Of a stretch of 50,941 nucleotides of DNA, positions 3,926-42,519 are shown piece by piece. The notes under the pieces were generated by a model, which was not told the DNA's origin, searched no databases, and saw only the letters and a list, made by a program, of their open reading frames with translations. The translations under genes and the position numbers were made by a program. Location: contig NW_021834174.1 in NCBI RefSeq assembly GCF_006345805.1, positions 1-50,941 on the forward strand, in the 5' to 3' direction. The first letter of the stretch is position 1. The number at the start of each line of letters is the position of its first letter. The stretch is from Octopus sinensis. Its lineage: Eukaryota.

Positions 3926-4009
3926 ATGGATGTAAATAAGATTATAAGCAAGATTCTGACTGGGAACTTTGAAGATGTGAAACGATTTATCAAAGAAAAT
4001 CCTGAAACG
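3926..4009 (+). CDS. Exon 1 (first detected coding exon) of ankyrin-RING-death domain gene; MDVNKIISKILTGNFEDVKRFIKENPET
   Basis: Polypyrimidine tract and AG at 3922-3923, ATG at 3926, GTAAGT donor at 4010; phase 0 matches exon 2; N-cap-like ankyrin helix. Further upstream exons cannot be excluded. Confidence 0.7.
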
Positions 4010-4169
4010 GTAAGTTTACTTTATATTGCTTCTTCAATGTTGAATGTTTGTTTATTATTTTATACACAATATTAAATGTTCCTAAATAACCAGATATATT
4101 TGTCCATAATATTTCATATCTTTCTTTACCTCTTTCCTCTAATCCTCATCATTGTCACTTTTTATAAAT

Positions 4170-14414: not shown

Positions 14415-15271
14415 GTTAGCGAATACATTTATATTTGTGTATATAGATATGTATATATATGAATGTGTGTGTGTTATATGTATATGATATACACATACAG
14501 TTTAGTGCCCCAAATTTTGTTTCTTCATAACTGATGATTCATATTTTTATAAATAAAAGTTGCTGCAAGACTTCCTTTTGTACCCCACAAAAAAACCACC
14601 CTTTCTTTAAATTTTTTTCCCCGACACAAATCCCGCTTTTCGGTTAAGGGAAATACGAATCTGCAAAAAAATTGGCAAAAATCGGCATTTTTAAATTACC
14701 CCCACCCCTATTTCCTTCATTCTTTACTTTTTTCACAATTTTTTTTTCAGAATATGAGGGAAAATACGGAGATGATGATTCGGACAAAAATTTCAAAACA
14801 TTTCTGTAGTTGGGTTAGGGTTAGTGTTGGGGAAAAAAGTCAAAGTTGAAGAATTTGGGAGGGGGGTGGAAATTCCACTGCCGATTTTTTTGGCAATTTT
14901 CCGGAAACTCCGTGTCCCAAAAAATTTTTTAAGTAAACAAATTTAGGAGAAACTGGTGGTGGTGGGGGGGGGACTCTTTTGAAAGTTGCTCATTTCCTTG
15001 TGTGTAGATGATGATTATGGTAATAAAATAAATAACTTTGATGAGTTGCAGATCAATACCCCTCCTCCCATGACACTCACTTTTTCACTTTCTTTCCCAC
15101 AATCCAGACATAATTGTTTGCTACAACATGGAAAAGGGTGGATTTCTGTTAAATTTCATTGAAAAATGGGTGGTCGTTTTGGAAATGGTCTCACAAAATG
15201 GAAATTATTTGTTCAGCAGTTTCTCTAAACAGTTTATATTTGTTTAATTTTAAATTTTCTTCACACAGACC

Positions 15272-18050
15272 TATTACTCAAAGCCTTTGACGAAATAGAA
15301 GGGGATATAGCATCATATGATGTTGAAGACAACTGGAGGTTTCTACGGGACAACCTGCTGGGGGCCACTGACCAGATCTGTGGATGGTGCAAAGTCCCCT
15401 CTCGACCTAAGGTAACGGTGGTGGAACAGCATTGTTGACAGGGCTATTAGACAAAAGAAACAGGCTTGGAAGGACTGGAAGAGCGGTGGTAGCAGGGAAT
15501 TGTATCAGACTGCCAGAAGGGAAGCTAGGAGACAGGTTTATTTAGCCAGAGGGGAAGCAGATAAGAAAAAATTTGCCAATGTTCTGTGCCATGAAGACCA
15601 AAGACTTGAGGTATTTTGTGTTGCAAGACAGTGTGTGAGAGAGAATCGTGATGTCGTAGGAGAGAAATGTATCCGCATGAATGATGGTTCACTTGCATTA
15701 AACGAGACTGCAAAGAGAGAGGTTTGGAAATGCCACTATGAAAGGTTGTTCTTTAAAGAGAATGAATGGGAGAAAGAGAGTCTGCTGAATGTCGACCCAA
15801 CAGGGATCAGCTATCCGAGTTGACATACCTTGGTAGATAAAGCAATTAAGAGTATGAAGACAGGGAAAGCACCCAGCCCATCAGGAATCACCACAGAGAT
15901 ACTCAAAATATCTGGCAGTGTTGGCTATAGCCTAGTTACCTGTCTAGTTGACCAGGTGATACATGAAGGACTCATACCTATGACTGGTGTAGTAGCACTA
16001 TAGACAACTGCTACAAAAGTAAAGGTGACGCTTTAGATACAAATAATTATAGAAGTATTAAGTTGTTGGATCAGGTAATAAAGGTCACGGAGAGGGTCAT
16101 AGCCCAACTAATTAGGGAGAGAGTCAGTTTAGATGAGATGCTGCTTAGGTTCATGCTAGGGAAAAGCACCACTGATGCTATATTTCTGGTAAGACAGCTG
16201 CAGGAGAAATACCTAGCCAAAGATAAACCTCTGTACCTGGCTTTCGTTGACATGGAGAAAGCCTTTGACAGGGTCCTCCGATCCCTTATCTGGTGCTCAA
16301 TGAGGAAACTAGAGATAGATGAATGGTTAATGAGAGCTGTGCAAGCCACATACAGGGACACTGTCAGTAAGGTGAGGGTTGGCAACGAGTATAGAGAAGA
16401 ATTCCGAGTAGGGGTAGGGGTCCACCAAATATCTGTCCTTAGCTCCCGCTTATTCATCATAGTCCTCCAATCAATAACAGAGAAATTCAAGACATGATGC
16501 CCCTGGGAGCTCCTCTATGCTGATGACCTTGCTCTAATTAGTGAGTCACTATCAGAACTAGAGGAAAAGTTTCAGGTGTGGAAGCAAAGATTAGAATCGA
16601 AGGTCCTTAGAGTCAACCTAGCTAAAACCAAAGTCTTAATAAGTAGCAAGGCAGACAAATCACAAACACCTTCAGGTAGATGACCCTGCTCAATCTGTAG
16701 AAAAGGTGTAGGTAGAAACTATAAGATGTATCCAGTGTAAGCTATGGACACATAAGAGGTGCAGTAATATCAAAGGAAGGCTAACTGGGAAGATAGTTTT
16801 TGTATGTGGCAGATGCTCAGGTGCAATAACCACGGAAAATGCGCAGAGAACAGCTTCTGTCACATTCCAGGGAAAAAAACTAGAAGTAGTGGATAGCTTC
16901 CATTAACTAGGGGACCAAGTCAATAGCAGGGGTGGATGCTCTGATAGTGTAGCTGCTAGAATAAGAATAGCCTGGGCAAAGTTCAAAGAGCTCCTACTCC
17001 TGCTGGTGACAAAGGGCCTCTCACTCAGAGTAAAAGGTTGACTGTATGACGCATGTGTACAAACAGCCATGCTACATGGCAGTGAAACATGGACTGTGAC
17101 TGCTGAGGACATGGCTAAGCTTGCAAGGAATGAAGCCAGTATGCTCCACAGGATTTGTGATGTCTGTGCATACATGGGAGAAAAGTTGGTGTGCAGGAGA
17201 GATGACTGCGCTGCTATGGTCATGTGTTGCGAATGAATGAGGACAGCTGTGTGAAAAAGTGTTACACCCTAGCAGTTGAGAGAACCTGTGGAAGAGGTAG
17301 ACCCAGGAAAACCTGGGATGAGGTGGTGAAGCATGGCCTTCCAACATTGGATTTTACCGAGGCAATGACTAGTGACCGGGACCTTTACAGATATGCTGTG
17401 CTTGAGAAGACTCGACAAGCCAAGGGAAACCATGGCCTATGCCAGTGGATGTAACCAGCCCACTTAGGAATACTCATTCATTGGAAGATAAACCGAAGAA
17501 CTATTGAGGCAAGTGAAATCAAAATTGCTGATGCGGCCGACGACAGTACCGCCTGATTGGCACTCATGCCAGTGAAACGTTAAAAGCACATCCGAATGTG
17601 GGGTGTAACCAGGACACTTATGGGTACCCCTCATTCATTGGACAATGAACTTTGCTTGTGAAGACTTTTTGAGGCCAGTGAAAACAAACCACAATCGCTG
17701 ACGTGGCCGATGACAGTACCACTGATGCCAGTGGAAAGTTAAAAGCACATCCAAGCGTGATCGTTGCCAGGGCCATGGATTGGCTCCCGTGCCAGTGACA
17801 CATGAAAAACAACATTCAAGCATCATCATTGCCAGTGCCACCGGACTGGCTCCCATGCCGGTGGCACAAAAGAGGACTCAACTAGACTCTCGGAGTGGTT
17901 GGCATTAGGAAGGACATCCAGCTGTAGAAACATTGCCTGACCAGATTGAGCCAGGTGCAGCCTCTGGCTCACCAGTCCTCAGTCAAACCGTCCAACCCAT
18001 GACAGCATGGAAAGCGGACATTCAACGATGATGATGATGATGATGATGAG
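15272..18050 (+). mobile_element. Second, 5'-truncated and more decayed RTE copy with (GAT)n tail
   Basis: Colinear with 11500-14140; ORF fragments 15500..15823, 16063..16497 and 17224..17454; many stops. Confidence 0.92.
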
Positions 18051-18368: not shown

Positions 18369-19033
18369 GTCACTCAGCAAAATAATGATCATTGGACCCC
18401 TCTACATGTTGCCTCTTATCAAGGACACACAGACACAGCTAAACTTCTCCTACAACAAAAGGACACTGATGTGAGGGTGAAGGACAAAGATGGTTGGACA
18501 CCTCTACATCTTGCCTGTCAGAATGGACACACAGACACAGCTAAACTTCTCATACAACAAAAGGGCACTGATGTGAGGGTGGTGGGCAACAATGGTTGTA
18601 CACCTCTACATCTTGCCTCACTTCAAGGACACACAGACACAGCTAAACTTCTCCTACAACAAAATGGCACTGATGTGAGGGTGGTGGACAAAGATCGTTG
18701 GACACCTCTACATCTTGCCTCACTTCATGGACACACAGACACAGCTAAACTTCTCATACAACAAAAGGGCACTGATGTGAGTGTGGTGACCAACGATGGT
18801 TGGACACCTCTACATCTTGCCTCACTTCATGGACACACAGACACAGCTAAACTTCTCCTACAACAAAATGGCACTGATGTGAGGGTGGTGAGCAACGATG
18901 GTTGGACACCTCTACATCATGCCTCTTATAATGGACACACAGACACAGCTGAACTTCTCCTACGACAAAATGGCATCAATGCCAATAAAATGGACAATGA
19001 TGGTGACACTCCTCTCCATGTGGCAGTTCAAAA
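18369..19033 (+). CDS. Exon 4, six near-identical 34-aa ankyrin repeats plus the start of a seventh
   Basis: Acceptor ttttag at 18363-18368; phase 0 start; repeated WTPLHLA...GHTDTAKLL...GTDVRV; donor GTAAGT at 19034; overlaps ORF 18471..19037. Confidence 0.95.
18393..19004 (+). repeat. Intra-exonic tandem repeat, 6 x 102 bp
   Basis: Unit starts at 18393, 18495, 18597, 18699, 18801 and 18903 (exact 102-bp period). Confidence 0.95.
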
Positions 19034-19810
19034 GTAAGTCCCCAATGGATTTGGATTATCCAGATCTTTTTCTTTAATGTTTTCAATAACGTTTGTTTTC
19101 TTGTTTTGAGTCATTCATGTCATAATCCCACCATGGGACGTCGTGCTTCAACTCTCTCTCTCACACTCTAATGACACTGTAACCTACTTCATTAATTAAT
19201 CATCATAATTATTATTGTTGCTGTTGTTACCTGACTAGATTCTTACTTCATCTCATCCTTCGTTACCTCAACGTTACAAGTTCAAATCTTTCCTTTTCTT
19301 CTTTTCATTCCATATAAAACCCTCACCCCCTCTCTCTTATAATTTTCCTCTTTCCTCTGACCTGGGCTAAATGCAGAATCATTCCTTACAGTGTTTAGTT
19401 TGATCTGTTTATGTTCCAAGTTCAAATCCTGCCAGAGTATTTATTAACAGCCTGGAGTGAAAATCTGCACCAGTAATATCCAGGGGTTCATTTAATAAAT
19501 TGTCCTCCCTCTTTTCTCCTGTTTTTGTGTCTGATTGCTGTTGGGCAAAATACCTTGTGGTATTTATTTACCACACTTTATGTTCAGAGTTCAAATCCTG
19601 CTGAGGTCACCTTGTCCTTCCATCTTTGCTAGGCTAATAAAATACAATACCAGTCATGTACTGGGGTCCTTATAATCCACATTAACGCTTCTCCCCATCC
19701 TAAATTTCATGGCTATATAACAGTTGTTCATCATACCATATATAGATTGCTGTGTTTACTCAGGTGTGTATATCTATCGTTGGTCTATAATGTAGAGAGT
19801 ATATCGAATA

Positions 19811-24471: not shown

Positions 24472-24783
24472 TTGTGTGTATCTCACTTCCATAACATTCA
24501 TGTATATGTGTGTGTATGTACAGGAATGTTAAGGATGTGGACACTAACCAACTCACCTGTTTTATGAACCCCTTATTAATATAGCAACATCATAATTCTT
24601 CATTACTAGTTTTGATCTGCTAATTATATGTTCACTCTTGTTCTGCTCCCCTAAAACTTACTATAGTGAGAGATAAATATAGATTAGGCTGAAACAATCT
24701 GTTTAAGACCTCTTAATATATTTATCATGTCCCTAACACATATCCCATGTACATTTTCAATTTCTATTTTTACTTCCACAAAG

Positions 24784-24996
24784 GATTCACTGAAACTGGA
24801 TATTGAGAATCATAAGAAAATGACACCATTGCTGAAAGCCGTCTCCGGGGCCCACCTCGGAATAATCCATAAACTTATTATACTTGGTGCAAACATAAAT
24901 GCTGTCGACAATGATGGCAATAATTGTTTGCACCTCGCCATAAAAAAGAAAGAGATGTTCCATTCTGAGGTGGAACCCATTCCCATTTTAGATGAG
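24784..24996 (+). CDS. Exon 6, ankyrin repeats (DSLKLDIENHKKMTPLLKAV...GANINAVDNDGNNCLHLAI...PILDE)
   Basis: AG at 24782-24783, donor GTAAGT at 24997; 213 nt, phase 0-0. Confidence 0.9.
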
Positions 24997-25859
24997 GTAA
25001 GTTTATAAAAATGTTTGTGAATATGTGTGTGTGGTTGGCATTAGGAAGGGCATGCAACCGTAGAAACTATGCCAAAACTGGCAATTGGTGCCTGAGCAGC
25101 TCTGCAGCTGCCCAGCTTCTGCCAAACTATCCAACCCATGCCAGCATAGAAAACGAATGTAAAATGATGAGGAGAAGTTGTGTATGTGTGAGTGAGAGAA
25201 AGAGAGAGAAGTAGAGAAACAGGCAGACATTGTTTGCTATTTTCTTTCACTCCCATCCACTTCTCCTCCTTTAGTATTAAATAATTCAGTTTCTCCTGAT
25301 AGCACCAGTTGTATTATGTAACTAACAATATTCATCTCTTCATTCATCTTCACATTCAAAAGCATGGCCACTCCACTGTAAAAAAGGTAACCCATCTTAA
25401 ATATGTGTCATGTAAACACTGCCATCACTGTATGAAGGAGAGGTGACCAACGACAGAGATAAGTCTTTAAATTTAAGAAAGAGAAATTCACAAACTGTTT
25501 TAAATATCGAATTTCAAGTTAAACGAGTTGAACTGTGTTAATTGCGAGAAAGCATATTTCATTATTCTTTTTCAAAGAAAGGAAAAGGAAAATAAATTCG
25601 TTTATGGACAATTAAATTTAAAGAAAATATATTCATGGACTTCGAAGAAAGTTTCTTTTATCAGTATGATAATGAATATATAACTGAGTTTATTCAAAGT
25701 TGATAATTAGGGTTCCAAATATTGCCAGGGCTTGTACTTTGTGTGTATATTGACTACAGTAATACCCCTTGCAATGATTGTAAAGAAGGGAGATGTGATG
25801 AGAATGAATTTACATTAAGATGTGCATACAAAAGTGTGATGTCACAAGATTGTATGTAT

Positions 25860-26030
25860 GACGATGTAACTAGACAGATAGTCATAGAGGCCCTTTGTTA
25901 CCAACAAAGATAGAAGCTCTCTGAACTTTGCCCTGCTTAATCTTATTCTAGCAGCTATGCTCTTGGCACATCCACCTCCACTACTGACTTGATTACCTAG
26001 ATAACAGTAGCTATCAACTACTTCTAGGTG
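25860..26030 (-). mobile_element. Short RTE RT C-terminal fragment
   Basis: LEVVDSYCYLGNQVSSGGGC...FRELLSLLVTKGL matches 13080-13220. Confidence 0.8.
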
Positions 26031-26031
26031 C

Positions 26032-26063
<32 letters not shown>

Positions 26064-27062
26064 TTGTTTGTTTGAAAGACATCAGCATCTATCCACTGCT
26101 AGATCTGATGGCATTTATTGTCTGTTGTTGCAGAATTTAAGCAACTCTTTGATTCCCAAATATGTAACGGTCACTACAGATGTGTGACTGTAATTCAGAC
26201 AGTTGATGGTCACCTGTGTATTGTTGTAATGTCTTCTTTGGTGAGAAGAAGCTACTCTAGCAGTCAACGACCCATTATTATAGGAATTGTCTATCAGACT
26301 AACAGTTTCAACAATTTCTTGGCTATAATGTGTTGGTGTGTTGCCTCAACCACCACACCAATCTTTACTTCACTTCATCAGCCAAAAATGTTTCTTTATA
26401 AATTTTGGAAACATTATTGATATGCTTGGATATGTCTGTCTGGTGTTGGTTTTGTTGCTGTGTCTGAAGAAATTATTATGTTCTTGGTGTTCTCTGTTCA
26501 TTGTTTGTTGTTATGGAAATGAGTTGCACTTAGTGACCAGTGAAACGTTTCCCAATCAATATTTGGATTATCGAAATTACCAGTAGGAAAATATGGGTGA
26601 CTGCTTTCATAGATGCAGATCTGAAGATGTCAAAAATCTGAGTTTTGATGGCAGTTTTGCAAATTCAAGTAGGAGTATATATGTTGTTAAAAAAATACTT
26701 CTTGTTGCTACCAGTTAAAATCTCCACAAGGAATTACAGAAAACCTTGAGTGACCATAGACCATCAGACGACCCGCATGGTAATTAGAATGGCCTTTGTG
26801 TAACAAAATGTTGCTTGCCATTGTTTGTTGTTATGTTGTTGTGTTATATTTATATATACAATACTCTTCCATAAGTATTTCTTTTGTTATGGCCAGTTGG
26901 CTTTATTAAGCCAGTTGTAAAGATAGGTTCTTGTTGGTTTGTTGTGTTCTGTTATTTGTGATACTTGTTCCATTATATTTCCTACATTTGACATGATTTG
27001 TTTATCTACAATATATATTTGTGTAATATTCTACTCATCGTTTTATATTTCATCATTTGCAG

Positions 27063-27238
27063 TGCTGCAGAGAGCTCCAACTGGACATGGATAGGAGGTT
27101 CTCTGGAATAGTAGTTGGGAGTTATCTTGCCAGCAAAGGAGCCAGCTTATATCATCGTAATGATAAGAAAGTGACCCCATTGGACTACATAAAAAATCAA
27201 CATTTGAAAGAAAAATTAAAAACATTTTTACAATCACT
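27063..27238 (+). CDS. Exon 7, terminal ankyrin (IVVGSYLASKGASLYHRNDKKVTPLDY), similar to the Mind-bomb last repeat
   Basis: Acceptor ttgcag at 27057-27062, donor GTAAGT at 27239; phase 0 to 2. Confidence 0.88.
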
Positions 27239-27369
27239 GTAAGTACTCACTGGCAACGACAAGATAAACCAGGACATTTTCTCCTTTGTATATAATCATG
27301 TTTATATGTTTATTTAGTTTGAATTCTCCCAATGTATTATTCCGTCATTAGTGTCTTGACTCAAGACAA

Positions 27370-27580
27370 CAATAATGATTTCCAATTCTGGCACAAGGCC
27401 AGCAAGGTCAGGGAGGGGATAAGTCAATTACAACATCTCCAGTTTTCAACTGGTACTTATTTTATCAACAGCAAGGTAAAGTCAACTGCACCTGAATTTG
27501 AACTCAGCATGTAAAGGCAGACGAAATGCCAGAAAGCATTTTGCTCCGTGTGCTAATGATTCTGCCAGCTTGCAGCCTTA
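27370..27580 (-). mobile_element. SINE fragment, family C; related pieces at 19380-19680, 31620-31780 and 32000-32060
   Basis: Shared gagttcaaat(t/c)c...gttgact...gtaccagt motif with B-box-like core. Confidence 0.55.
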
Positions 27581-28230
27581 AGACCACACAACAATAATAA
27601 GAACAATAAACAGAAAATACAGTTGTTAGTGGATCAAACGAAAAACACTATTTTGATGACATTCACATGATTGCTTGTGTTGACTGATATACCTCACCAT
27701 CCACCCCTGACTATTTTAGAGTTCGGTGACCTCCATGAAAATGTAGTACTAAATAATAAAGTGAATGAATACATTTTCAAATTGCTATTTAGAAGTAAAT
27801 AGGATTTATCTGTCTACCAACAATTTTTTCTCTCTCTCTTCTCTGACTCAATCAGTTGTCATGTACGCTTTCATGTAAAAATAACATAAAACACACACTA
27901 ACAATGTGTATGTCATCATCATCATCATCATCATTTAACGTATGTTGTCCATGCTGGCATGGATTGGACTGTTTGACTGGGATGGCATGTTGGAAGGCTG
28001 CACCCTAGTCAGCCTTTGATATTTTCAGCCCACCCTTATATGTGTATGTTAATGTGACACTTGTATGCACACAAATCTGCTTGTATGTAATTGTTTACAG
28101 AAGAATTTACGATGTACTCTTGCTGGTTACTGTTGTGCCCCTTAATATTCTGTACTCTAAACATGTCCACAACGAAATATTTTATTATAAATGAATGTTA
28201 ATGGGATGGTGTTTATATTTTGTTCCACAG

Positions 28231-28373
28231 GTGTCGGTGGTGTCAAGAGAAAAAGGCTACTGTCACACTCCATCCATGTCAACATACCGTTACTTGTCAG
28301 AATTGCTGTTCTCAAATGACATTTAAGCAATGCCCCATATGTCGACAACACATACGCAGCAAAAGTGGATTTG
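28231..28373 (+). CDS. Exon 8, RING-HC finger (CRWC...PCQH...CQNC...CPICR), IAP/Mind-bomb type
   Basis: Acceptor ccacag at 28225-28230, donor GTAAGA at 28374; phase 2 to 1; C3HC4 spacing. Not in the ORF track because it is too short. Confidence 0.92.
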
Positions 28374-29213
28374 GTAAGAACATTCTTTCTTGATCTGTCT
28401 GTTGTCTCATCAACTTTCTGGTATGGAATAATGCATTTCATATTGTAGTGGAGACATGCAACTCCTTGTTTGTAACTATATATGATTAACACTTGTTATA
28501 ATGTTTGCCATCCTTTTAGACATTTTATACTCACACTCGTTAGTTTTTAGATGTGATTAATGCTAAAAGAGACATTGTTTTCTGACTCTTTCACCTTTTG
28601 GCTTTACTTTTGAGTTGATTCGTTTTAATTCAAACATGAAGCCTGGTCCAAGGTAGTATCAGAAAGTTCAGACTAGTTCTGTAGCATGCCAACAGATGGC
28701 AGCACACCGTTGCGCGCACAGTGAGAGCTAGCAGTGACTTTCATGAGGCAGTGTGCTGGGTGACACCACTGCGTTTACTTCAAAAGTTGTGAAATTTGTG
28801 CTTTTGTAGTCATTTGTAGGCTGTAGTCTGCAATTTTCTAATGGTTAGGAACAAATAACCAATGTGAAATTTTGCGTTAAACTTGTCCAGCAAAGACATA
28901 AGAAAGAAACAACAAAACTAAGAGAAAAAGAGTGTTATGAAGTGATAACTAAGTGAGAGAATTTCAGAATTGTTAGATTAGTATATAGGATGTCTTAAGA
29001 GAAAGATGAGACTTAGAAAGGTTTGCCTATTTTGTTGTGGTTCTAAATATTGAATTATTATATAGTAACAGCTTAGAAAGTGTTGACCGAAAGCATAGTG
29101 GTCACCAATTGACTATTGATGATATGAATGCCTTACAATAATGGAATATAGATTATTAAACGAGACAAAGAAATTTTACTATGAAGTATAAAACTTTGAA
29201 ATGCTTATTTCAG

Positions 29214-29264
29214 TGTGTCCAAAGTCTGAAGAAGAAGCAGCCCAGGCAGTTGTAGAGCCTGTTG
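29214..29264 (+). CDS. Linker micro-exon 1 (VCPKSEEEAAQAVVEPV)
   Basis: ttatttcag acceptor and gtgagt donor; 51 nt, phase 1-1, open frame. Confidence 0.75.
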
Positions 29265-29379
29265 GTGAGTATAAAATAACTGTAATTGATTTCTATAAAT
29301 TTTACTTCCACCTAAAATATATTATTTGTGTGAATGTCTGAGAACAGGTTCAATTCCTAATTTCCAATTCTTATTTCAG

Positions 29380-29430
29380 TGTGTCCAAAGTCTGAAGACA
29401 AAGCAGTCCAGGCAGTTGTAGAGTCTGTTG
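29380..29430 (+). CDS. Linker micro-exon 2 (VCPKSEDKAVQAVVESV)
   Basis: Same splice signals; 51 nt; 166 bp after copy 1. Confidence 0.7.
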
Positions 29431-29545
29431 GTGAGTATAAAATAACTGTAATTGATTTCTATAAATTTTACTTCCACCTGAAATATATTATTTGTGTGAA
29501 TGTCTGAGAACAGGTTCAATTCCTAATTGCCAATTCTTATTTCAG

Positions 29546-29596
29546 TGTGTCCAAAGTCTGAAGACAAAGCAGTCCAGGCAGTTGTAGAGTCTGTTG
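29546..29596 (+). CDS. Linker micro-exon 3 (identical to copy 2)
   Basis: Same splice signals; 51 nt. Confidence 0.7.
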
Positions 29597-29711
29597 GTGA
29601 GTATAAAATAACTGTAATTGATTTCTATAAATTTTACCTTCACCTGAGATATATTATTTGTGTGAATGTCTGAGAACAGGTTCCATTCTTAATTTCCAAT
29701 TCTTATTTCAG

Positions 29712-29762
29712 TGTGTCCAAAGTCTGAAGAGAAAGCAGTCCAGGCGGTTGTAGAGTCTGTTG
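29712..29762 (+). CDS. Linker micro-exon 4 (VCPKSEEKAVQAVVESV)
   Basis: Same splice signals; 51 nt. Confidence 0.7.
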
Positions 29763-29877
29763 GTGAGTATAAAATAACTGTAATTGATTTCTATAAATTT
29801 TACCTTCACCTGAAATATATTATTTGTGTGAATGTCTGAGAACAGGTTCCATTCTTAATTTCCAATTCTTATTTCAG

Positions 29878-29926
29878 TGTGTCCAAAGTCTGAAGAAAGC
29901 AGCAAGGCGGTTGTAGAGTCTGTTTT
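29878..29926 (+). pseudogene. Linker micro-exon 5, 49 nt and frame-breaking as written (degenerate copy or sequence error)
   Basis: Splice signals are intact but the length is not a multiple of 3; several small indels relative to copy 4. Confidence 0.5.
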
Positions 29927-30039
29927 GTGAGTATAAAATAACTGTACTTGATTTCTATAATTTTACCTTCACCTGAATATATTATTTGTGTGAATGTCTG
30001 AGAACAGGTTCCATTCTTAATTTCCAATCCTTATTTCAG

Positions 30040-30090
30040 TGTGTCCGAGGTGTAGAGAGAAAGCAGTCAAGATGGTTGTAGAGTCTGTTG
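30040..30090 (+). CDS. Linker micro-exon 6 (VCPRCREKAVKMVVESV), diverged copy
   Basis: Same splice signals; 51 nt, phase 1-1. Confidence 0.7.
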
Positions 30091-30470
30091 GTGAGTATAA
30101 AATAACTGTAATTGATTTCTATAAATTTTAATTTCATCTGAAATATATTGTTTGTGTGAATGTCTGAGAACAGGTTGTAGGAAAGAAAAGACACAATGAA
30201 GAGAAAAACAGTTTTATCAAGTGATAATTGAATGAGATATTCGCAGAAATGTTAGATTATGTAGGCTGTCTTAATAGAGAGAGAAAAGGGGAGGAATTTA
30301 GGAAGGTTAGTCTATTTTGTGGTGTCCCTGAATATTGAGCTTTAACATGGTATCACCAGTTGACCATTGATAATAGGAATGCCTGACACTAATAAAATAT
30401 AGACTATTAAGAGAAATAATTTTTTAAAAATTTAACTATATATTGTAAAACTTTTAAATATTTATTTCAG

Positions 30471-30542
30471 AGAGTTTAAATTTGGAGGAAAACCGCGCCC
30501 ATAGCACATCGAAGAAGGTGGCAGTTAAGCAACAGCAAGTTG
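30471..30542 (+). CDS. 72-nt phase 1-1 exon (ESLNLEENRAHSTSKKVAVKQQQV), diverged paralogue of death-domain exon 1
   Basis: tttatttcag acceptor and gtgagt donor; same length, flanks and CAG CAA GTT G end as 34318-34389. Confidence 0.65.
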
Positions 30543-32329
30543 GTGAGTATAAAATAAGTCCGTAAGTGACTTCAAGTTAGTTTTACTTCACTTGAGCATA
30601 TTTTGTTTGTCAGAAGGACTGAGAACAGGTTCCATTCTTAATTTTCAATTGAAAAATTATCTGTTTAATAATTCTTTTGAAGAAATTACTGAAATTTAAG
30701 AGAATACCCACCAAGGTTAGAACAGACAAAAGTTAATGATGTCTTTTGGAATAGAGAACTAAAATATGTTATTTGGTTGGGGGTGAACAAGTGCTTTAAC
30801 GACAAGGCCTTCGTTTTGCATTTATACTGTTTACTAATAAGTTGTTGTTGTTTTAGCAGGAGTCTCTCATAATCTGGCAGACTTACAATGAAATGCATTC
30901 CAATTGTCAACATCCTGTCTTTTTGTCACTGATAGGAAATCTATCATTACATCCATTAAATGCATTGTCTTTATCGAAGTAGAAAACACTGGCTTGCTAC
31001 TGAGATAGCCATTGCTTCTTTGTTGTTTTTCTCTCTCTCTCTCGCATTCTCTTTTTGATAGATACTAGCTGCAAGATACAATAAATGACATTGTCCTCAT
31101 CATTTATCATCTGATTTCCATGTTCCTGTGGAATTGATGGTGGAGGGGTCACTGTCCAAGTCAGTTCTTGTTAGCAGTTACTGTCCACCTTCGTTGGTTG
31201 AGGATCATGTCCCACTAAAATATTCCAGCTTTCCTATGATGGTCTGCCCTTCCTAACACCATCCACTTTATAAAGGATCCTGGGTGCATTTTATTGTGGC
31301 ACAAATACAAGAAAGATTGTTATGTATTCAACAAAATTAAACGTTCCTCTCAAACTTATGCAAAGAAATATCAGACATGTTGAAAGAAGAAAGGAAAGTA
31401 AATGAATTAGAGAGCAGCTCGTTAAGAAACCTTATGAGGTTACTCGGAAGCTGTTTGCAGATGTTAAGAGCGGCAGGATAAAATGTAATAAATGAAATCC
31501 AGCTTAGGTATGGTTAGTGGTCAGTAGGGATAGCTAGAAAAGCATTCTTAGCTATCCCTACTGACCTCAATATATATATATTTAACTTTTTTGTTTTATT
31601 ATTTACTAATTTGAAATTTCACCAGTTACAATCTGCTTTATTTTTGCAGCTATTAATCTTGTCCATTTCTGCCAAGGTGATGAGCAAGTACCAGTTGTGT
31701 ACTGGGATTGATGTAATCAATTAGTCCCCTCCTCTGTAATTGCTGGCCTTGTACCAAAATTTGAAACCAATATTATCCATTCCCGTTCAACTGTTTTCAA
31801 TTTGCACACTGCTACATGAAACCACAACATGCCATTACGGGTTTATTTCTGCTAGTTATAGGCCTGAATGTCCATGTTAGCTAACTGCAGGCTACTCTCA
31901 TTGTCAGATGATTAACCTTGGTCATTACATTGTATCATTTAAAAAGAAACAATGTTTTAGTAGTTGAATTAAGCTTTTATTATTATTATTATTAACATTC
32001 ATTCTCTGAGTTCAGTACCTTCTTGGGTTGACTTTTCATTTCATTCCTCACAGGTCAGTAAAACAATTACAAGTTACATAACATGTCAAACTAATTGACT
32101 TCATACTCTCTCCTACAGATCTATCCACTTGTATTAATCGAAGAATTCATAATTAACATTCATTTTTGATCATATTTCAAAACCCTCGTTACCACACTAT
32201 ATTGCTGTCCAACTGAATCATCTCTTCCAATCATATCAAGTAAAACCTTCCGCTTTTCTGTCTATTTTGGTGAGACTTCAGTTGGCTTTTTAGTGAGACT
32301 GATTGTTTGGTGTTTTAGAACATGACCTT

Positions 32330-33780: not shown

Positions 33781-34317
33781 TTGAGTATCAGTTTTTATGC
33801 AACATTTCAGATTTTTTTATTGCTATTATTTATGGATGAACAATTATATATAGTTAATAAGATTTTGTGAAAGCATAAAGTGTTTTTGGATACCTGATAT
33901 GTTTTTGCTCCCCTCTGTAGAATTGATCATTGCCCACCTGGAGAGAAATCTGCTTCATTAAGAAGTCTTCTAACATCTCAAATACATGTGGCACATATAT
34001 AAGGAAAAAAAATGAAAACTAAAAGAAAAACAGTGTTATCAAGTGATAATTAAATGAGATAATTGTAACATTGTTAGATTATTTAAGATGTCTTAATAGA
34101 GAAAGGAAATTGAGGAAGGTCAGTCTATTTTGTTGTAGACCTAAGTATTGAGCTATTTACCTGGTCCCACTGGAGAAAGCATAAAAATGTTGACCAAAAA
34201 CATAGTGGTCACCCGATGACCAGCGATGATGACAGGTATGTCCCACTATAATAAAATATAGATTATTAATAAAGAATTTTTACTCTCAAGTATAACAGTT
34301 GCAAATATTTATTTCAG

Positions 34318-34389
34318 AAACTCCAAAGTTAGAGGAGAGGTGTCTCCAAGATGTTGCAAAACTATTAGGAGCCAACTGGCAGCAAGTTG
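34318..34389 (+). CDS. Death-domain exon 1 (ETPKLEERCLQDVAKLLGANWQQV)
   Basis: atttcag acceptor and gtgagt donor; 72 nt, phase 1-1; L..VA..LG..W motif of death-domain helices 1-2. Confidence 0.85.
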
Positions 34390-35706
34390 GTGAGTATAAA
34401 ATAACAGTACTTAATTGATTTCAATAAGTGTCAGCTTTTGTTTGTCAGCATGACTAAGAGAAGATCCCATTCCTACTTTCCAATTGAAAGGCTAGCTGTA
34501 AAGTGATTCTATTAAAGGTGTTGGTATTACTGAAACATCATAAAATAGCCACCGAGATTAGCGGGGTCAGTAAAATGGCTAAATTAGAGGACACAATCGA
34601 TTTAATATTGTCTTTTGAGAGAGCAGATTAAAATATGTCATTTAAGGGTAAACTGGTGAATTAATGATAATTTTTTTTGTTTGTTTTACATTTTTACTAA
34701 GTTTACGTTTTATTGTTTTTTCTTTGCAAATTGCCTGTTTTAATCAGAAATACGATGGAAAGTATTTCAGGTGGGACATCTCTGTCTTTCAGTTGGTAGT
34801 ACAGGACTACATCATTAAGTGCATCCTTTTTTACATGCTCCTGTGTATAGTGAGTGGCACGTTGCAGTCACTCCACTGTCCAGTGTCCATCTAGTTGTGA
34901 ACCACTCTTCACTGACATGTAATGGTTGATTGTACGTAGGTGGATGGTGTTTATGTTGGTGATTCATGTCTTCTTTCCTGCAAGTTAAAACTCTCCTCTT
35001 TGCTTGGTTTAACTTAACACCTCTCTATTACACTGAGTAACAACGATTTTTGTCCATGGATAACAATTGTTATTTCCAATTTGCTTAATCCTAGAAAATA
35101 CGAGAATGGCTAGTATCTCCTTCAAACTTTGCTTTCGTCACAATATATACCTTGTAGACCTCACACATTTCAGCTGATGTTGTTTCACAGTGATTTTACG
35201 CTGTTGTCTTGATAAATTCACCACAGACACAGCAGAATGTATCTGCCAGATGCTTACAACCTCTTGATGCCATCTGTGATGAATGCAGTTCTTGGATAGT
35301 TAGAAATAAACTGAACTGGTGATCTTGTCATCCCTTTTTTTACACTGGTATATGTTGCCAGAACGTTCTAGAAATTCTTGGAAGTTTTAGTAACTTCTTG
35401 ATGATAGTTCTAGAAAATTCTAGAAAATTCTGCTTCAGTGACTCAGCACTGAATCTGTTTGGAAATAGGTTTCAAAACATTGATGTCCAGGTGACAAAAG
35501 CAACGTTTGAAGGAAACAGATGTCCTTTCCTTTGATTTCTTGATGGAAGTAAATAGGAAATAACACTTAACTTATCAAAGACAAGAAAAAATTAAAAGTT
35601 TGTTCTTCAGTGTTATTGATTTCTCTCTAAATCATGTCCTTGAACCATTCAAAGAGATTATGAGTCATGGACCCATGTTGTCTACCAAAATGTGTTATAT
35701 TTTTGT

Positions 35707-36923
35707 ATTGGGTCATCCCATAAGTAATGCAGTGTTTTCAATTGTATGAACTAAAAGTCAGAGGGGGATGGGATAAACTATCTGCATCAACTTGCTATAA
35801 AAGCAGTACCTGTACTTATTCTTAGTGTGAGTTTTGAAGAGTGCAGTTAATTTTAACAGTTATTTTTTCAAAGCTATAATGGAAGTGACAAAGGCATATT
35901 CGAAATATTTTGCTTTGAGTTCAGTAAAGCAACAATGCAACAGAAGTGCGAGGAATATTAATGCAGTATATGGGGATTGGACAATAAGCGTAAGCCAGTG
36001 TCAATGGTGGTCTCAGAAGTTCCGAGCTGGAAACTACAGCCAAGAAGATCAACTTTGTTCTGGAAGATATGTAGAGCTTGGACGAGGACATCCTACAACC
36101 CTGGTGGAACAAAATCCCATTGTAACTAGCAGAGAAGCTTGGATTCGGTCCATTCAGCAGCCATTCATCGATACTTGCATGGTATTGGAAAAATCAGCAA
36201 TTGGGTCAATGGATTGCACACAGAGTAAATGTGTGCTCTTCTCTGCTGCCATGTCTCATGAATGAACCTCTTTTGAACTGAATAGTGACTGGTGATGAGA
36301 AAAGGGTTCTCTATAAATACGTTATGCACCAAAGACAGTGGGTAGGGAAAGGAGAAATACTGGCACTCCAGAATAAAAAAAGTCTCTACCCACGTAAGGT
36401 GCTGTTATCTGTTTGGTGGGATATGAAAGGTTTGGTCCACTTTGAACTTTTAAACCCTAACCAAACAATAACTAAGGAGATCTACTGCAAGCAGCTTGAG
36501 CGGCTTAAGTCAGTGCTAGAAGAAAAACGACCATCTTCAGTTTCAAGACGAAAGGTGTTCTTCCATCAGGATAATGTTCAATCACATAGAGTGAGGATGA
36601 CATTCCAAAGGCTGGAGCAGTTTGAATGAGAAACAATTCCCCACCCACCATATTCACCAGTCATTGCCCCATCTTCAAACTTATTTGGATGTAAAAAATA
36701 TGTTACCTGTAGATGAGGTCAGAACGGTAGTAGAGAAGTAATTTTTGTCATGGACAAGTCAATTTTGGAAGAGGGGCCTTGCAAGTGCACCAGATAGATG
36801 GAAGAGCATTGTAGAAAATGATAGAGAGTATATTTTAGGTTAAAAAAGAACTTTGTTTATCTTAATTTTGAAGAATAAAAGATGTATAAAACAAATGCAT
36901 TATTATTTATAGGATGACCCAAT
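35707..36923 (+). mobile_element. Decayed mariner (Tc1/mariner, DD34D-like) transposon
   Basis: TIRs attgggtcatcccataagtaatgc / gcattattatttataggatgacccaat; ORF pieces with HTH, TGDEKRVLY, HQDNVQSH and PPYSPVIAPS. Confidence 0.88.
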
Positions 36924-37852: not shown

Positions 37853-38058
37853 GCAGGAATTTAGGAATCAGAAATGTCCAACTGGGGATTATCAGGCATG
37901 ACAATCCTTTAAACACTAAAGAGCAGAGCTTCCAGATGCTGCACACATGGTACACAAGTTGTGATCCAGAGAGACGAACACTCAAAACACTCAGAAAAGC
38001 TCTTGAGGAAGCTGAATGCTTTGAGGCACTTGAATGTCTACCATCAGAAGAAAATTGA
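37853..38058 (+). CDS. Terminal exon, death domain (GRNLGIRNVQLGIIRHDNPLNTKEQSFQMLHTW...TLKTLRKALEEAEC...*)
   Basis: ttttgcag acceptor; G+GC completes Gly; LG.....I....P....EQ...ML..W......L..AL death-domain pattern; TGA at 38056-38058. Confidence 0.9.
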
Positions 38059-39145: not shown

Positions 39146-39806
39146 ATATATATCATATACAGATACTTTTTCTATGTAATATATGATACCTGTGGGTATT
39201 TCACTTTGTCCTGTTGTGGTTTAAGACAGGCTCCCTCTAATGTGGGGGTGTTTGAATAAAACTCAGGGATGGGAGTGCAAGTAAGAGTTATCTCTATTTT
39301 ATATTCTAGCTTTAGGATCATTGTTAGTTACTAATTACTGAAGTTTTTTTTTTTATCAGCAGAAAATAAAACTTTATGATTGCATATATCTATATATATA
39401 AAACTCAACTTGTGTATCTGTGTGTTTAACTTCCCAGCACATCTCCTAGCCAGAAAATCGTAGAACCACCAAAAATGGGTCACTTAAAGTTTAGGCGAAT
39501 GAAAATTGAACTGTGCTATTTCTGTTCCGAAATTCATCTTGCAAGTGCAAAAATCGATAATGTGTTCGTTTAGGCCTTATCCCATGCATTGAATAGTGAA
39601 CTTTACTCAGTCACCTGTTTGACGTGAACTGTGTTCACTACGCGTGCAAGCATGCGTAAATTGCATGAAAAATAAAAAATCAAGATATAAAAACGAATTG
39701 CCGTAAACATTGTAGAAATTCGGCAAAGAAACGAATTTTCGGGATGCAGCCTGGAGGGTTTTTTCGTATTAATCGTTTCTACTTTGTGAACACATACCAG
39801 TTATCT

Positions 39807-40752
39807 TGGGCCCTTATTGTTCTTAGTCTTCATAAGTGACTTGCCTGACGACCTCACGCAACACACCCTTCTATTTGCCGACGATGTCAAACTGGTCGCT
39901 CCTCGCGGTGATATAGAGGATCTTCGTCGATGTCTCCACCAAATTTGGAGGTGGTCTAACGAATGGGACCTGTGTCTGAACGTGTCAAAGTGCTGTCATC
40001 TGCCTGTTGGCTCTACTCCTGCAACTCAACTTGATTTTGAGCCGGGTCGTCTGCTGCTGGAGAGGACCGATCAGGTAAAGGACCTGGGTATCTTGGTGGA
40101 TTCCTCCTTTTCGCCTTTGTCCCAGTGCGTCCATGCTGCCAACAAAGCACGCGGAATTCTGTTCTTGATTCGACGGTCATTCGGAATGCTCACAGCAGCC
40201 ATATTCCTACCACTCTATGTCATGCTGGTGAGACCCATACTGGAGTACAGGATTCAAGACTCTTCTCCTTATCTCCTCAAAGACATACGGCATCTCGAAA
40301 GAGTCCAGAAGCTGGCTACCCGCATGGTTCATGGTCTCAAAAATTTGTCTTATGAAGAAAGGCTGAGGACGCTCGACCTTTATTCTCTAGAAAAACGGCG
40401 CCGCCGTGGTGATCTCATTCTCGCCCACAACATCAGTGTAACCTCTCGAAAAAGCTGTTCTTCACTCCTGCTCCAGAGCGTCGGCTGCGGGGTCATTCAG
40501 AAAAGCTCTACCTGCGACGATTTCATCTCAATCGAAGGAGAGGAGCTTTCTCCGTCCGGGTTGCGGATCCGTGGAACAAGCTGCCAGACGAGATGATGAA
40601 GATGCCGACGACCGCTTTGTTCAAAGTCTCCCTTGACCTCAAGTGGCCTGAACTCTTTACATGAACACCACCCTGTACTTAACTCCATGTCCCCCTACAT
40701 GGCCTTGCTATTTGCTTTTGAGCCAAATTAACTAACTAACTAACTAACTAAC
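39807..40752 (+). mobile_element. 5'-truncated CR1/L2-group LINE (RT C-terminus) with (CTAA)n tail
   Basis: ORF 39817..40596: FADDVKL, KDLGILVD, LVRPILEY, LERVQKLATRMV, YEERL, LEKRRRRGDLI; tail actaactaactaac. Confidence 0.9.
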
Positions 40753-41554: not shown

Positions 41555-41668
41555 GTGCTGTACATATATATATGTATGTATGTGTGTGTGTGTGTTGGTG
41601 TATGCAAATACATACATACATATATATATTATATATATATATATATATGTAATGATGTATGTATTTGC

Positions 41669-41700
<32 letters not shown>

Positions 41701-41802
41701 TATATTATATATTATGTATATAATATATATATGTATATATATATATATGTATACTATATATGTATATTATATATATGTATATATATATATACATATATAT
41801 AT

Positions 41803-41881
<79 letters not shown>

Positions 41882-41918
41882 ATATATTATACATATATAT
41901 ATACATATATATATATAC

Positions 41919-41953
<35 letters not shown>

Positions 41954-41966
41954 ATATATATATACC

Positions 41967-41997
<31 letters not shown>

Positions 41998-42277
41998 CTA
42001 TATATAATATTATACATATATATAATATATATATACATATATATACACATATATATATCATACATATTAATATATACATATACATATATATACATATATA
42101 TATATACATATACATATATATACATATACATTATATACATATATCATATATATACATATACATATATATACATATACATATATATATATACATATATATA
42201 TATACATATACATATATATATACATATATATATATATACATATACAATATATATATATATATATATATATACATAAC

Positions 42278-42325
<48 letters not shown>
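41555..42325. repeat. Long interrupted (TA)n/(TACA)n microsatellite, left flank of the hammerhead array
   Basis: Direct inspection; the Y/I-rich ORFs here are artefacts. Confidence 0.98.
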
Positions 42326-42327
<2 letters not shown>

Positions 42328-42519
42328 AAGCAATAGGGTTTAGCAACGAGTTGCCTTACCACATATCGAATTTAGAAATAGCAGTCAAAGGGTTATAGCT
42401 ATTTCTTCTACTAAAAAGGGAGATCTCAGTAAAAACAGCATTTGGAAGGCAGACACAAACAGGTAAGAGGGAATGAATCGACTGCAATCTATCATACATT
42501 TTTTTAGTTATCCACGGAC
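42326..42519 (-). repeat. Inverted partial copy of the array unit at the 5' end of the array
   Basis: Reverse complement of gtccgtggataac...gttgctaaaccct(t)attgct, with 4 substitutions and 1 indel versus the array consensus. Confidence 0.95.

What the first reader, a model, noticed from the sequence alone, without database searches (positions are those of the whole stretch)
29200..30178. Six tandem 51-nt symmetric phase-1 micro-exons form an expandable linker between RING and death domain
Seen: a 166-bp unit made of a 51-nt exon and a 115-nt intron with intact ttatttcAG/GTgagt sites, encoding VCPKSE(E/D)KAVQAVVESV-like peptides that the ORF track misses. Established: symmetric exons with length divisible by 3 can be skipped or duplicated without a frameshift. 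Inference: alternative inclusion or copy-number variation could tune the distance between the ubiquitin-ligase RING and the death domain.
Basis: partly seen in the sequence, partly recalled or inferred. Interest (0 to 1): 0.75.

Follow-up and report, generated by a model that had tools for sequence, protein, structure and literature searches.

The report
Duplicated mini-exons lengthen an octopus protein linker
An octopus gene for an ankyrin–RING–death-domain protein carries a tandem array of a 166-bp exon-plus-intron unit, copied from the first death-domain exon. Each good copy adds 17 amino acids to the linker, which is a clean but not surprising case of protein lengthening by tandem exon duplication.

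Summary
The repeat is real: window 29200-30176, period 166 bp, 5.9 copies, 94% matches. The claim of six symmetric exons needs one correction. Copies 1-4 and 6 are 51-nt phase-1/1 exons with AG/GTGAGT sites. Copy 5 is 49 nt, and including it gives a stop codon in copy 6.

The window is a 50.9-kb Octopus sinensis scaffold. My splice model (RING exon, copies 1-4 and 6, a 72-nt exon, two death-domain exons) matches the RefSeq protein "MIB2-like isoform X2" (XP_029656683.1) at 100% identity. These exons are therefore already annotated as coding.

New here: the micro-exon, the 72-nt exon and death-domain exon 1 share about 330 nt of upstream and 110 nt of downstream intron. They are serial duplicates of death-domain exon 1.

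Copy number differs between loci:
- window: 6 units
- its O. vulgaris counterpart: 2
- a paralogue pair: 4 and 5
- O. bimaculoides: one degenerate 46-nt copy

RefSeq isoforms of two paralogues include different subsets of micro-exons. Both isoforms of this gene carry the same five.

The exons show no purifying selection and vary more than the introns. AlphaFold2 gives the linker low confidence.

Verdict: a new member of a known kind (cassette exons from tandem exon duplication). The "tunable linker" idea is only partly supported. Interest is modest.

The parts
24778..24996 (+). Ankyrin-repeat coding exon of the annotated protein (approximate borders)
   Evidence: tblastn of P0001 residues 3-75, 97% identity. 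Precomputed Pfam Ank hits on P0001.
27060..27239 (+). Coding exon just upstream of the RING (approximate borders)
   Evidence: tblastn of P0001 residues 75-134, 98% identity.
28231..28373 (+). RING exon (IAP-type C3HC4, 143 nt). It ends in phase 1 with ...SKSGF.
   Evidence: Pfam zf-C3HC4_3 E=1.7e-9. Closest solved structures are the cIAP1/2, MYLIP and XIAP RINGs. Sequence read.
28890..29213 (+). Intron segment before the array. It is homologous to the segments before the 72-nt exon (30180-30470) and before death-domain exon 1 (34010-34317).
   Evidence: Seven-sequence alignment, mean column identity 73%.
29200..30176 (+). Tandem array of the 166-bp exon-plus-intron unit, 5.9 copies
   Evidence: TRF: period 166, 94% matches, score 1651. 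Unit alignment.
29214..29264 (+). Micro-exon 1, 51 nt, phase 1/1, VCPKSEEEAAQAVVEPV
   Evidence: Present in P0001 and P0019.
29380..29430 (+). Micro-exon 2, 51 nt, VCPKSEDKAVQAVVESV
29546..29596 (+). Micro-exon 3, 51 nt, identical to micro-exon 2
29712..29762 (+). Micro-exon 4, 51 nt, VCPKSEEKAVQAVVESV
29878..29926 (+). Unit-5 exon copy, 49 nt, frame-breaking. The acceptor is intact and the donor lacks the -1 G. It is a pseudo-exon, a possible poison exon, or an assembly indel error.
   Evidence: Absent from P0001 and P0019.
30040..30090 (+). Micro-exon 6, 51 nt, VCPRCREKAVKMVVESV (CPxC variant)
30471..30542 (+). 72-nt phase-1/1 exon (ESLNLEENRAHSTSKKVAVKQQQV). It is an older duplicate of death-domain exon 1.
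   Evidence: Present in P0001. Equivalent exons exist in O. vulgaris L002 and in O. bimaculoides L003 and L004.
34318..34389 (+). Death-domain exon 1, 72 nt, phase 1/1 (ETPKLEERCLQDVAKLLGANWQQV; start of the Pfam Death match). It is the source of the duplicated units.
37853..38058 (+). Death-domain exon 2, with the stop codon at 38056-38058

Best explanation
**What it is.** The region is a tandem array, made by repeated duplication of a 166-bp segment. That segment runs from about 10 nt before a 51-nt exon to about 105 nt into the next intron. The array sits in the intron between the RING exon and the death-domain exons of an Octopus sinensis ankyrin–RING–death-domain gene (RefSeq "E3 ubiquitin-protein ligase MIB2-like").

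**Origin.** The founder 51-nt exon is itself a shortened copy (21 nt missing) of the 72-nt first death-domain exon. It was duplicated together with about 330 nt of upstream and 110 nt of downstream intron. A second, older copy is the 72-nt exon at 30471.

**How it works.** Every exon from the RING exon onward is bounded by phase-1 introns. Each intact copy can therefore be spliced in or skipped without changing the frame. Each one adds a 17-residue module (V-C-P-[KR]-x-[ER]-[ED]-[KE]-A-[VA]-[QK]-x-V-[VA]-E-[SP]-[VF]) that begins directly after the C-terminal tail of the IAP-type RING. Five copies are used in the annotated protein. Together with the 72-nt exon they give a 109-residue, poorly ordered and partly helical linker.

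**Sources of length variation.** Linker length varies in two ways:
- Units are gained and lost, presumably by unequal recombination or replication slippage (inferred). Copy number differs between paralogues and between the sister species O. sinensis and O. vulgaris.
- Exon skipping is annotated in two paralogues, but not in this gene.

**Constraint.** The modules are weakly constrained. Some copies have already decayed into frame-breaking pseudo-exons. I read the array as a fast-turnover spacer, not a finely tuned device.

**Shown versus inferred.**
- Shown: the anatomy, the origin, the annotation and the copy-number differences.
- Inferred: actual splicing in vivo, the duplication mechanism, and any effect on ubiquitin-ligase or death-domain function.
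For: - **Array and exon anatomy:**
- **Frame logic:**
- **Domains:**
- **Annotation:** my model equals the RefSeq protein at 100% identity and 100% coverage, on a contig of exactly 50,941 bp.
- **Common origin:** the flanks of the three exon types are homologous, and the micro-exon aligns to death-domain exon 1 with a 21-nt gap. The duplication junction CCAATT|CTTATTTCAG contrasts with the ancestral CCAATT|GAAAG.
- **Arrays in other loci:**
  - L001: 5 units, one of them 49 nt.
  - L002: 2 units, with the same right-hand junction as the window. It is collinear with the window at about 95% identity on both sides.
  - L005: 4 units.
  - O. bimaculoides L004: one 46-nt copy and no array.
- **Isoforms differing by whole 17-residue modules:** P0002, P0004-P0008 and P0020-P0023.
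- **Hints that the models rest on transcripts:** an intron-retention model that reads into the unit's intron (P0018/P0025, ...VESVGEYKITVIDFYKF...) and RING-to-death-domain-exon-2 models (P0010, P0028).
- **Weak constraint:** 21/52 exon columns vary against 10/86 intron columns (Fisher p=1.3e-4). Pairwise dN is about equal to dS.
- **AlphaFold2:** the linker has pLDDT 24-51 with scattered helices, while the death domain reaches 82-93.
Against: - I could not inspect any RNA reads. Inclusion rests on RefSeq and ENA gene models.
- Both annotated isoforms of this gene carry the same five micro-exons, so alternative inclusion at this locus is not shown.
- The window is an unplaced long-read scaffold. 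Unit 5 here, and units 2-3 of L005 from the same assembly, are rich in 1-nt indels. Copy number and the frame break could therefore be partly assembly error.
- With copies 94-100% identical, intact splice sites and open frames are expected even without function.
- The AlphaFold2 model rests on only 17 closely related sequences. The RING itself is also poorly modelled, so low confidence in the linker is weak evidence of disorder.
Confidence: 0.72

Rival explanations
1. Prediction-only exons. The 51-nt units keep splice-site-like motifs and an open frame only because they are young copies. The gene-prediction pipeline strung them together, but real transcripts skip the whole array.
For: Copies are 94-100% identical, so intact signals carry little weight. 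There is no purifying selection on the exons. No reads were available to me.
Against: Many paralogue isoforms differ by exactly one module in different combinations, and one model retains an intron. To my knowledge, pipelines produce such models only from transcript alignments. Independent annotations of O. vulgaris also include the modules (P0003, P0013).
Confidence: 0.1
2. Assembly artefact in the details. The array exists, but its copy number in this scaffold and the 49-nt state of unit 5 are long-read assembly errors. In that case there could be six good exons, or a different number.
For: The window is an unplaced 50.9-kb scaffold. Unit 5 has five indels in 166 bp, while the other units have none. 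Units 2-3 of L005, from the same assembly, show the same scatter of 1-nt deletions, including in homopolymer runs.
Against: The separate O. vulgaris assembly also holds a 49-nt copy with intact splice sites. Its indels are different ones, and its intron is clean (L001 unit 4). Decaying copies are therefore real in at least one array. Arrays of 2 to 5 units occur in three other loci.
Confidence: 0.2
3. Regulated unproductive splicing. The frame-breaking unit keeps working splice sites and acts as a poison exon. Its inclusion sends the mRNA to nonsense-mediated decay and so sets protein dosage, while the good copies are incidental.
For: Unit 5 has the same acceptor as its neighbours and a GT donor, and including it gives a stop in unit 6. 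A second array (L001) also keeps one 49-nt copy next to last in the array.
Against: The two broken copies arose through different indels, so nothing is conserved. The L005 broken copies have also lost the acceptor. Random decay explains these facts more simply.
Confidence: 0.05
4. Mutually exclusive exon cluster (Dscam-like). One of the duplicated exons is chosen per transcript, through competing RNA pairings in the conserved introns.
For: The exons are tandem and homologous, and the introns are more conserved than the exons.
Against: Annotated proteins contain 2 to 5 copies at once. The unit intron folds no better than shuffled sequence (z=+1.03). There is no Rfam match.
Confidence: 0.02

Closest known systems
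Cassette or alternative exons created by tandem exon duplication (general class; Kondrashov & Koonin 2001 and Letunic, Copley & Bork 2002, cited from my own knowledge; see also PMC8373072, listed)
   Same: Adjacent homologous exons have the same length and phase and inherited splice sites. Isoforms differ by whole exons.
   Different: Most described cases are pairs used in a mutually exclusive way to substitute part of a fold. Here up to five copies are used additively in a linker. The source exon encodes the start of a death domain, and the copies no longer belong to that domain.
Titin PEVK and nebulin repeat exons (from my own knowledge)
   Same: Runs of short, frame-preserving duplicated exons set the length of an extensible or spacer segment through their number and differential inclusion.
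   Different: Those arrays are old, conserved across vertebrates, and have measured mechanical roles. This array is confined to the O. vulgaris/O. sinensis lineage among the three Octopus species with hits, turns over between sister species, and has no known role.
LPA kringle IV-2 copy-number repeat and NBPF Olduvai exon doublets (from my own knowledge)
   Same: An exon-plus-intron unit is amplified in tandem inside a gene, so protein length follows genomic copy number.
   Different: Those units are kilobases long and encode whole folded domains. This unit is 166 bp and encodes 17 residues.
Neuronal micro-exons (3-27 nt, SRRM4-dependent; from my own knowledge)
   Same: Short, frame-preserving cassette exons that insert a few residues next to a domain.
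   Different: At 51 nt these exons lie at the upper limit of the loosest definition. They arose by recent duplication, and there is no evidence of a neural programme.
MIB2 / Mind bomb E3 ligases (the name RefSeq gives this gene)
   Same: Ankyrin repeats followed by a C-terminal-type C3HC4_3 RING.
   Different: Neither this protein nor its longest relative has MIB/HERC2 or ZZ domains. There is one RING, not two, and a death domain follows it. The RING is closest to the IAP and MYLIP RINGs, and the death domain to that of RIPK1 and the ankyrins.

Membership tests
Cassette exons derived from tandem exon duplication | Neighbouring exons are homologous to one another | tested here: met
   Units are 94% alike. 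Their exons and introns align. Homology extends to the 72-nt exon and to death-domain exon 1 through shared flanks.
Cassette exons derived from tandem exon duplication | Length divisible by 3 and the same intron phase on both sides | tested here: met
   Five of six copies are 51 nt and phase 1/1. Unit 5 is 49 nt and fails.
Cassette exons derived from tandem exon duplication | Usable splice sites on every copy | tested here: met
   All units have ttatttcAG. All have GTGAGT after the exon, and unit 5 lacks the -1 G. Only the consensus was inspected; no scoring model was run.
Cassette exons derived from tandem exon duplication | Transcripts that include or skip individual copies | tested here: inconclusive
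   Annotated isoforms of two paralogues differ by single modules. Both isoforms of this gene carry the same five. No reads could be examined.
Mutually exclusive exon cluster (Dscam type) | Exactly one exon of the cluster per transcript | tested here: not met
   P0001 has five copies, P0020 has four and P0002 has three.
Mutually exclusive exon cluster (Dscam type) | Conserved intronic RNA pairing (docking and selector sites) | tested here: not met
   The unit intron has an MFE of -11.1 kcal/mol against a shuffle mean of -14.2 (z=+1.03). Long-range pairings were not searched.
MIB2 / Mind bomb E3 ligases | MIB/HERC2 and ZZ domains N-terminal to the ankyrin repeats | tested here: not met
   Pfam lists for all 18 hits and a scan of the full-length relative P0025 show only Ank families, zf-C3HC4_3 and Death.
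MIB2 / Mind bomb E3 ligases | Two or more C-terminal RINGs at the end of the protein | tested here: not met
   There is one RING match, followed by the linker and a death domain.
Death domain (Pfam PF00531) | Profile match above the curated cut-off | tested here: met
   38.0 bits against a cut-off of 22.6, E=1.8e-9. The best solved match is the RIPK1 death domain, E=4.4e-5. AlphaFold2 models an all-helical C-terminal domain with pLDDT 82-93.
IAP-type RING (Pfam zf-C3HC4_3, PF13920) | Profile match above the curated cut-off | tested here: met
   37.8 bits against a cut-off of 27. The best solved matches are the cIAP1 and cIAP2 RINGs, E=1e-8 to 1e-7.
Micro-exons in the strict sense | Length of at most 27-30 nt | tested here: not met
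   The exons are 51 nt. That fits only the loosest published limit of 51 nt or less (from my own knowledge).

The most novel reading that the evidence does not exclude
The array is not just young junk. It would be a selected, fast-evolving module of an expanding octopus ankyrin–RING–death-domain family. Three strands make up this reading:
- The modules keep the first-helix-like pattern of the death-domain exon they came from. They begin right at the C-terminal tail of an IAP-type RING, so their number and variants (including CPxC forms that could pair into a CxxC-x13-CxxC metal site) would set ligase dimerisation or reach.
- Frame-breaking copies would act as poison exons.
- The excess of exon over intron divergence, seen both in the array and across the gene, would reflect diversifying selection like that described for venom and immune genes.
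Probability: 0.1. Interest if true: 0.6.

Novelty: new member of a known kind. Interest (0 to 1): 0.35.

Why it matters
This locus shows several stages of exon birth and death side by side. A domain-coding exon was copied with its splice sites. One copy was shortened and then amplified as a 166-bp unit. Copy number now differs between sister species and between paralogues, some copies are already broken, and annotated isoforms mix the copies.

That makes it a convenient natural system for two questions: how new coding sequence enters a protein as a linker, and how the splicing machinery handles near-identical neighbouring exons.

It also shows that the RefSeq name "MIB2-like" is misleading. 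The protein is an ankyrin–IAP-type-RING–death-domain protein from a family of several closely related genes, at least two of them on one O. vulgaris chromosome. That architecture suggests death-domain signalling, not Notch-ligand ubiquitination.

None of this overturns current ideas, and the exons are already in the public annotation.

Tried and rejected
- **RNA structure in the conserved intron.** The 115-nt unit intron folds no better than shuffles (z=+1.03). Rfam finds nothing in 28000-31000 at E≤1. I rejected structure as the cause of intron conservation.
- **A gene on the other strand.** Only short, repeat-derived ORFs overlap the array.
- **A mobile element.** The intron motif occurs only in the array and after the 72-nt exon, and more weakly after death-domain exon 1. 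It occupies the same positions in the other Octopus loci. This points to local duplication, but no genome-wide search was possible.
- **Selection test on the exons.** Pairwise dN and dS for 11 intact copies are noisy (dN/dS roughly 0.2 to more than 2). There are too few sites to decide.
- **Fetching the LOC115225502 locus.** This failed because only the longest product of a gene is indexed. The same happened for P0001 and P0011. The genomic array of that paralogue is therefore known only from its proteins.
- **Literature.** Searches for octopus with death domain, ankyrin and RING, and for MIB2 with octopus, found nothing on this family.
- **Stray cluster members.** Three 43-aa JGI proteins clustered with P0018 are unrelated.
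- **AlphaFold2.** It gave a usable ankyrin region and death domain but low confidence for the RING and linker. I did not run a fold search on the model.
Full report

Tandem Repeats Finder reports a single strong array at 29200-30176, with period 166, 5.9 copies, 94% matches and score 1651. Reading the sequence and extracting every ttatttcAG…GTGAGT interval gives six exon-like segments.
- Five of them (29214-29264, 29380-29430, 29546-29596, 29712-29762, 30040-30090) are 51 nt.
- In phase 1 they translate to VCPKSEEEAAQAVVEPV, VCPKSEDKAVQAVVESV (twice, identical DNA), VCPKSEEKAVQAVVESV and VCPRCREKAVKMVVESV.
- The other two phases mostly carry stops.

The fifth unit differs. Its exon is 49 nt (29878-29926) and the unit is 162 bp. 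It carries several small indels, and its donor context is TTTT|GTGAGT. Joining all six exons shifts the frame and gives a stop inside the sixth. The observation therefore holds for five copies, not six.

**2. What gene is this?**

The exon at 28231-28373 matches Pfam zf-C3HC4_3 (E=1.7e-9). The exons 34318-34389 plus 37853-38058 match Pfam Death (E=1.8e-9). The long exon at 18369-19034 is six ankyrin repeats.

A splice model made of the RING exon, micro-exons 1-4 and 6, a 72-nt exon at 30471-30542 and the two death-domain exons was searched against the protein collection. The top hit is 100% identical over 100% of the query and sits on a contig of exactly 50,941 bp. It is XP_029656683.1, [quoted passage not shown]. 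Isoform X1 (XP_036355658.1) has the same linker and differs only at the C-terminus.

The window is therefore an unplaced O. sinensis scaffold, and the micro-exons are already annotated as coding, with unit 5 skipped.

The name is misleading. Neither this protein nor a full-length relative has MIB/HERC2 or ZZ domains or a second RING. The RING is closest to the cIAP, MYLIP and XIAP RINGs. The death domain is closest to those of RIPK1, the ankyrins, Fas and PIDD.

**3. Where did the units come from?**

Three exon types are each followed by GTGAGTATAAAATAA…: the micro-exons, the 72-nt exon at 30471 and death-domain exon 1 at 34318. Aligning about 500 bp around each, together with the equivalent pieces from O. 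vulgaris and O. bimaculoides, shows clear homology.
- It covers about 330 nt upstream and about 110 nt downstream of the exon, with mean column identity 73%.
- The micro-exon aligns to death-domain exon 1 with one 21-nt gap.
- At the peptide level, xxPKxE[ED][KR]xxQxV is still shared.
- The array unit ends at …TTTCCAATT and restarts with CTTATTTCAG, whereas single-copy versions continue …CCAATTGAAAG. The amplified segment therefore ran from about 10 nt before the exon to about 105 nt after it.

The history is serial. Death-domain exon 1 was copied twice with its flanks, one copy lost 21 nt, and that copy was then amplified in tandem.

The 72-nt copy already exists in O. bimaculoides (L003, L004). 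At the position of the array, O. bimaculoides L004 has a single 46-nt exon-like copy that is closed in phase 1. Among the three Octopus species with hits, the array is thus seen only in O. vulgaris and O. sinensis.

**4. Copy number and isoforms elsewhere.**

| Locus | Species and position | Units | Notes |
|---|---|---|---|
| Window | O. sinensis scaffold | 6 | Five intact, unit 5 is 49 nt |
| L002 | O. vulgaris OX597842.1, 29.71 Mb | 2 | Plus a 58-bp sub-repeat in the last intron |
| L001 | O. vulgaris OX597842.1, 29.43 Mb | 5 | One is 49 nt with intact splice sites and is skipped in P0013 |
| L005 | O. sinensis counterpart of L001 | about 4 | The two middle units are indel-ridden |
| L004 | O. 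bimaculoides | 1 | Degenerate 46-nt copy, no array |

L002 is collinear with the window at about 95% identity on both sides of the array and shares the same right-hand junction.

At the protein level, LOC115225502 of O. sinensis has isoforms with one, two, three or four modules in different combinations, with or without the 72-nt exon (P0002, P0004-P0008, P0020, P0021). The L005 gene has isoforms with both modules, only the first, or only the second (P0011, P0022, P0023).

Other models splice the RING straight to death-domain exon 2 (P0010, P0028), or read on into the unit's intron (P0018 and P0025 end in …VESVGEYKITVIDFYKFYLHLKYIICVND). To my knowledge, alternative models of these kinds are built only from transcript alignments, so they suggest real and variable splicing. 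I could not see the reads.

For the window's own gene, both annotated isoforms carry the same five modules.

**5. Constraint and structure.**

Within the array the exon columns vary more than the intron columns: 21/52 against 10/86 (Fisher p=1.3e-4). Using only the five annotated exons the counts are 13/52 against 7/86 (p=0.011). Pairwise dN and dS among 11 intact copies from three loci are of similar size. Only V1, C2, P3 and V13 are invariant at the protein level.

The same excess of exon over intron divergence holds for the upstream coding exons when the window is compared with L001, L002 and L005.
- Exons differ at 5.3-5.7% of positions and introns at 2.6-2.8% (p=0.001-0.006).
- The split is 20-22 non-synonymous to 6-7 synonymous differences.

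I cannot tell whether this reflects diversifying selection, higher mutability of the exons, or homogenisation of the introns.

The unit intron has no unusual RNA fold and there is no Rfam match. AlphaFold2 on an alignment of 17 relatives models the ankyrin region and death domain well (pLDDT about 80-93). It gives the linker, residues 182-293, a pLDDT of 24-51 with scattered helices. This is compatible with a flexible, helix-prone spacer, but the evidence is weak because the RING was also poorly modelled.

**6. Most likely mechanism.**

The intact units are frame-neutral cassette exons. Each adds a 17-residue module directly after the C-terminal tail of the RING (…CPICRQHIRSKSGF|V…).

Linker length changes through gain and loss of 166-bp units, presumably by unequal recombination or slippage between near-identical units (inferred). 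In paralogues at least, it also changes through exon skipping.

From established knowledge of IAP-type RINGs, the residues just after the last zinc ligands contribute to dimerisation and E2~ubiquitin engagement. What is spliced there could therefore matter, but nothing here tests that. Given the lack of constraint, the decaying copies and the rapid turnover, I think a weakly constrained spacer is more likely than a tuned device.

**7. Caveats.**
- The scaffold comes from a long-read assembly. Unit 5, and L005 units 2-3 from the same assembly, have scattered 1-nt indels that look like consensus errors. The copy number and the frame break need checking.
- The separate O. vulgaris assembly also contains a 49-nt copy, produced by different indels. 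Broken copies are therefore not purely artefacts.

**8. Comparison and verdict.**

This is a new example of a well-known process: tandem exon duplication giving additive cassette exons, as in the titin PEVK region and, at the genomic level, LPA KIV-2. It is not a mutually exclusive cluster, not a strict micro-exon programme and not a MIB2 orthologue.

The points I found no paper describing are the derivation from a death-domain exon, the species-level turnover and the exon-over-intron divergence. Interest is modest (0.35).

Noticed in passing
window 24790-28372 compared with L001, L002 and L005: Coding exons differ about twice as much as the introns between this gene and its closest counterparts: 5.3-5.7% against 2.6-2.8% (Fisher p=0.001-0.006). 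The split is about 3:1 non-synonymous to synonymous. Exons evolving faster than introns is unusual, and I have no explanation for it.
   Followed up: partly
window 18392-18975: A 102-nt (34-residue) ankyrin repeat is tandemly repeated 5.7 times at 90% identity within one exon. The same array has 13.8 copies in O. vulgaris L002 and 6.7 in O. sinensis L005. The ankyrin domain therefore also varies in repeat number.
   Followed up: partly
window 30040-30090; paralogue proteins P0002 and P0020: Some micro-exon variants carry CPxC (VCPRCRE here; VCPRCRE and VCPKCEE in LOC115225502). Adjacent modules then give CxxC-x13-CxxC, a spacing typical of small zinc sites. In other copies the S/F/C alternation at residue 5 is a single-base change (TCT/TTT/TGT).
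   Followed up: no
L001 10512-10560; L005 13712-13920: Other arrays also hold frame-breaking copies. L001 has a 49-nt copy with intact splice sites. L005 has two indel-rich copies, one with a damaged acceptor.
   Followed up: partly
window about 42400-49800: A satellite with a period of about 605 bp, roughly 12-13 copies. It shows up as evenly spaced TATTACTTAG and TATTTAA hits and as repeated ORFs. It is flanked by a 718-bp (AT)n tract at 41608-42325.
   Followed up: no
window 10849-13027, 15229-17451, 39790-40593: Fragments of non-LTR retrotransposons: an endonuclease-reverse-transcriptase domain plus RVT_1 at E=6.5e-33, and two weaker RVT_1 pieces. The first two lie in introns of the ankyrin part of the gene and the third lies downstream of its stop codon.
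   Followed up: partly
window 35831-36626: A remnant of a mariner/Mos1-type transposase (HTH_48 and Transposase_1 domains) lies in the intron between the two death-domain exons. It is absent from the collinear O. vulgaris locus L002, where the alignment has a gap at window 35565-36421.
   Followed up: partly
window 3926-4072: An ORF starting MDVNKIISKILTGNFEDVKRFIKENPETVS resembles the N-terminus of the full-length O. vulgaris relative P0025 (MDVNKIISKIQNGDFEDVKRLIKENPDQV). The RefSeq models for this gene start far downstream at MLAQ, so they may be truncated at the N-terminus.
   Followed up: no
L004 1774-18131 (O. bimaculoides, protein P0012): The annotated 147-residue protein reads the end of the RING exon in the wrong frame (…NAPYVNNTYSAKVDL), apparently to accommodate the 46-nt exon copy. 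It looks like a mis-modelled or decaying gene.
   Followed up: no
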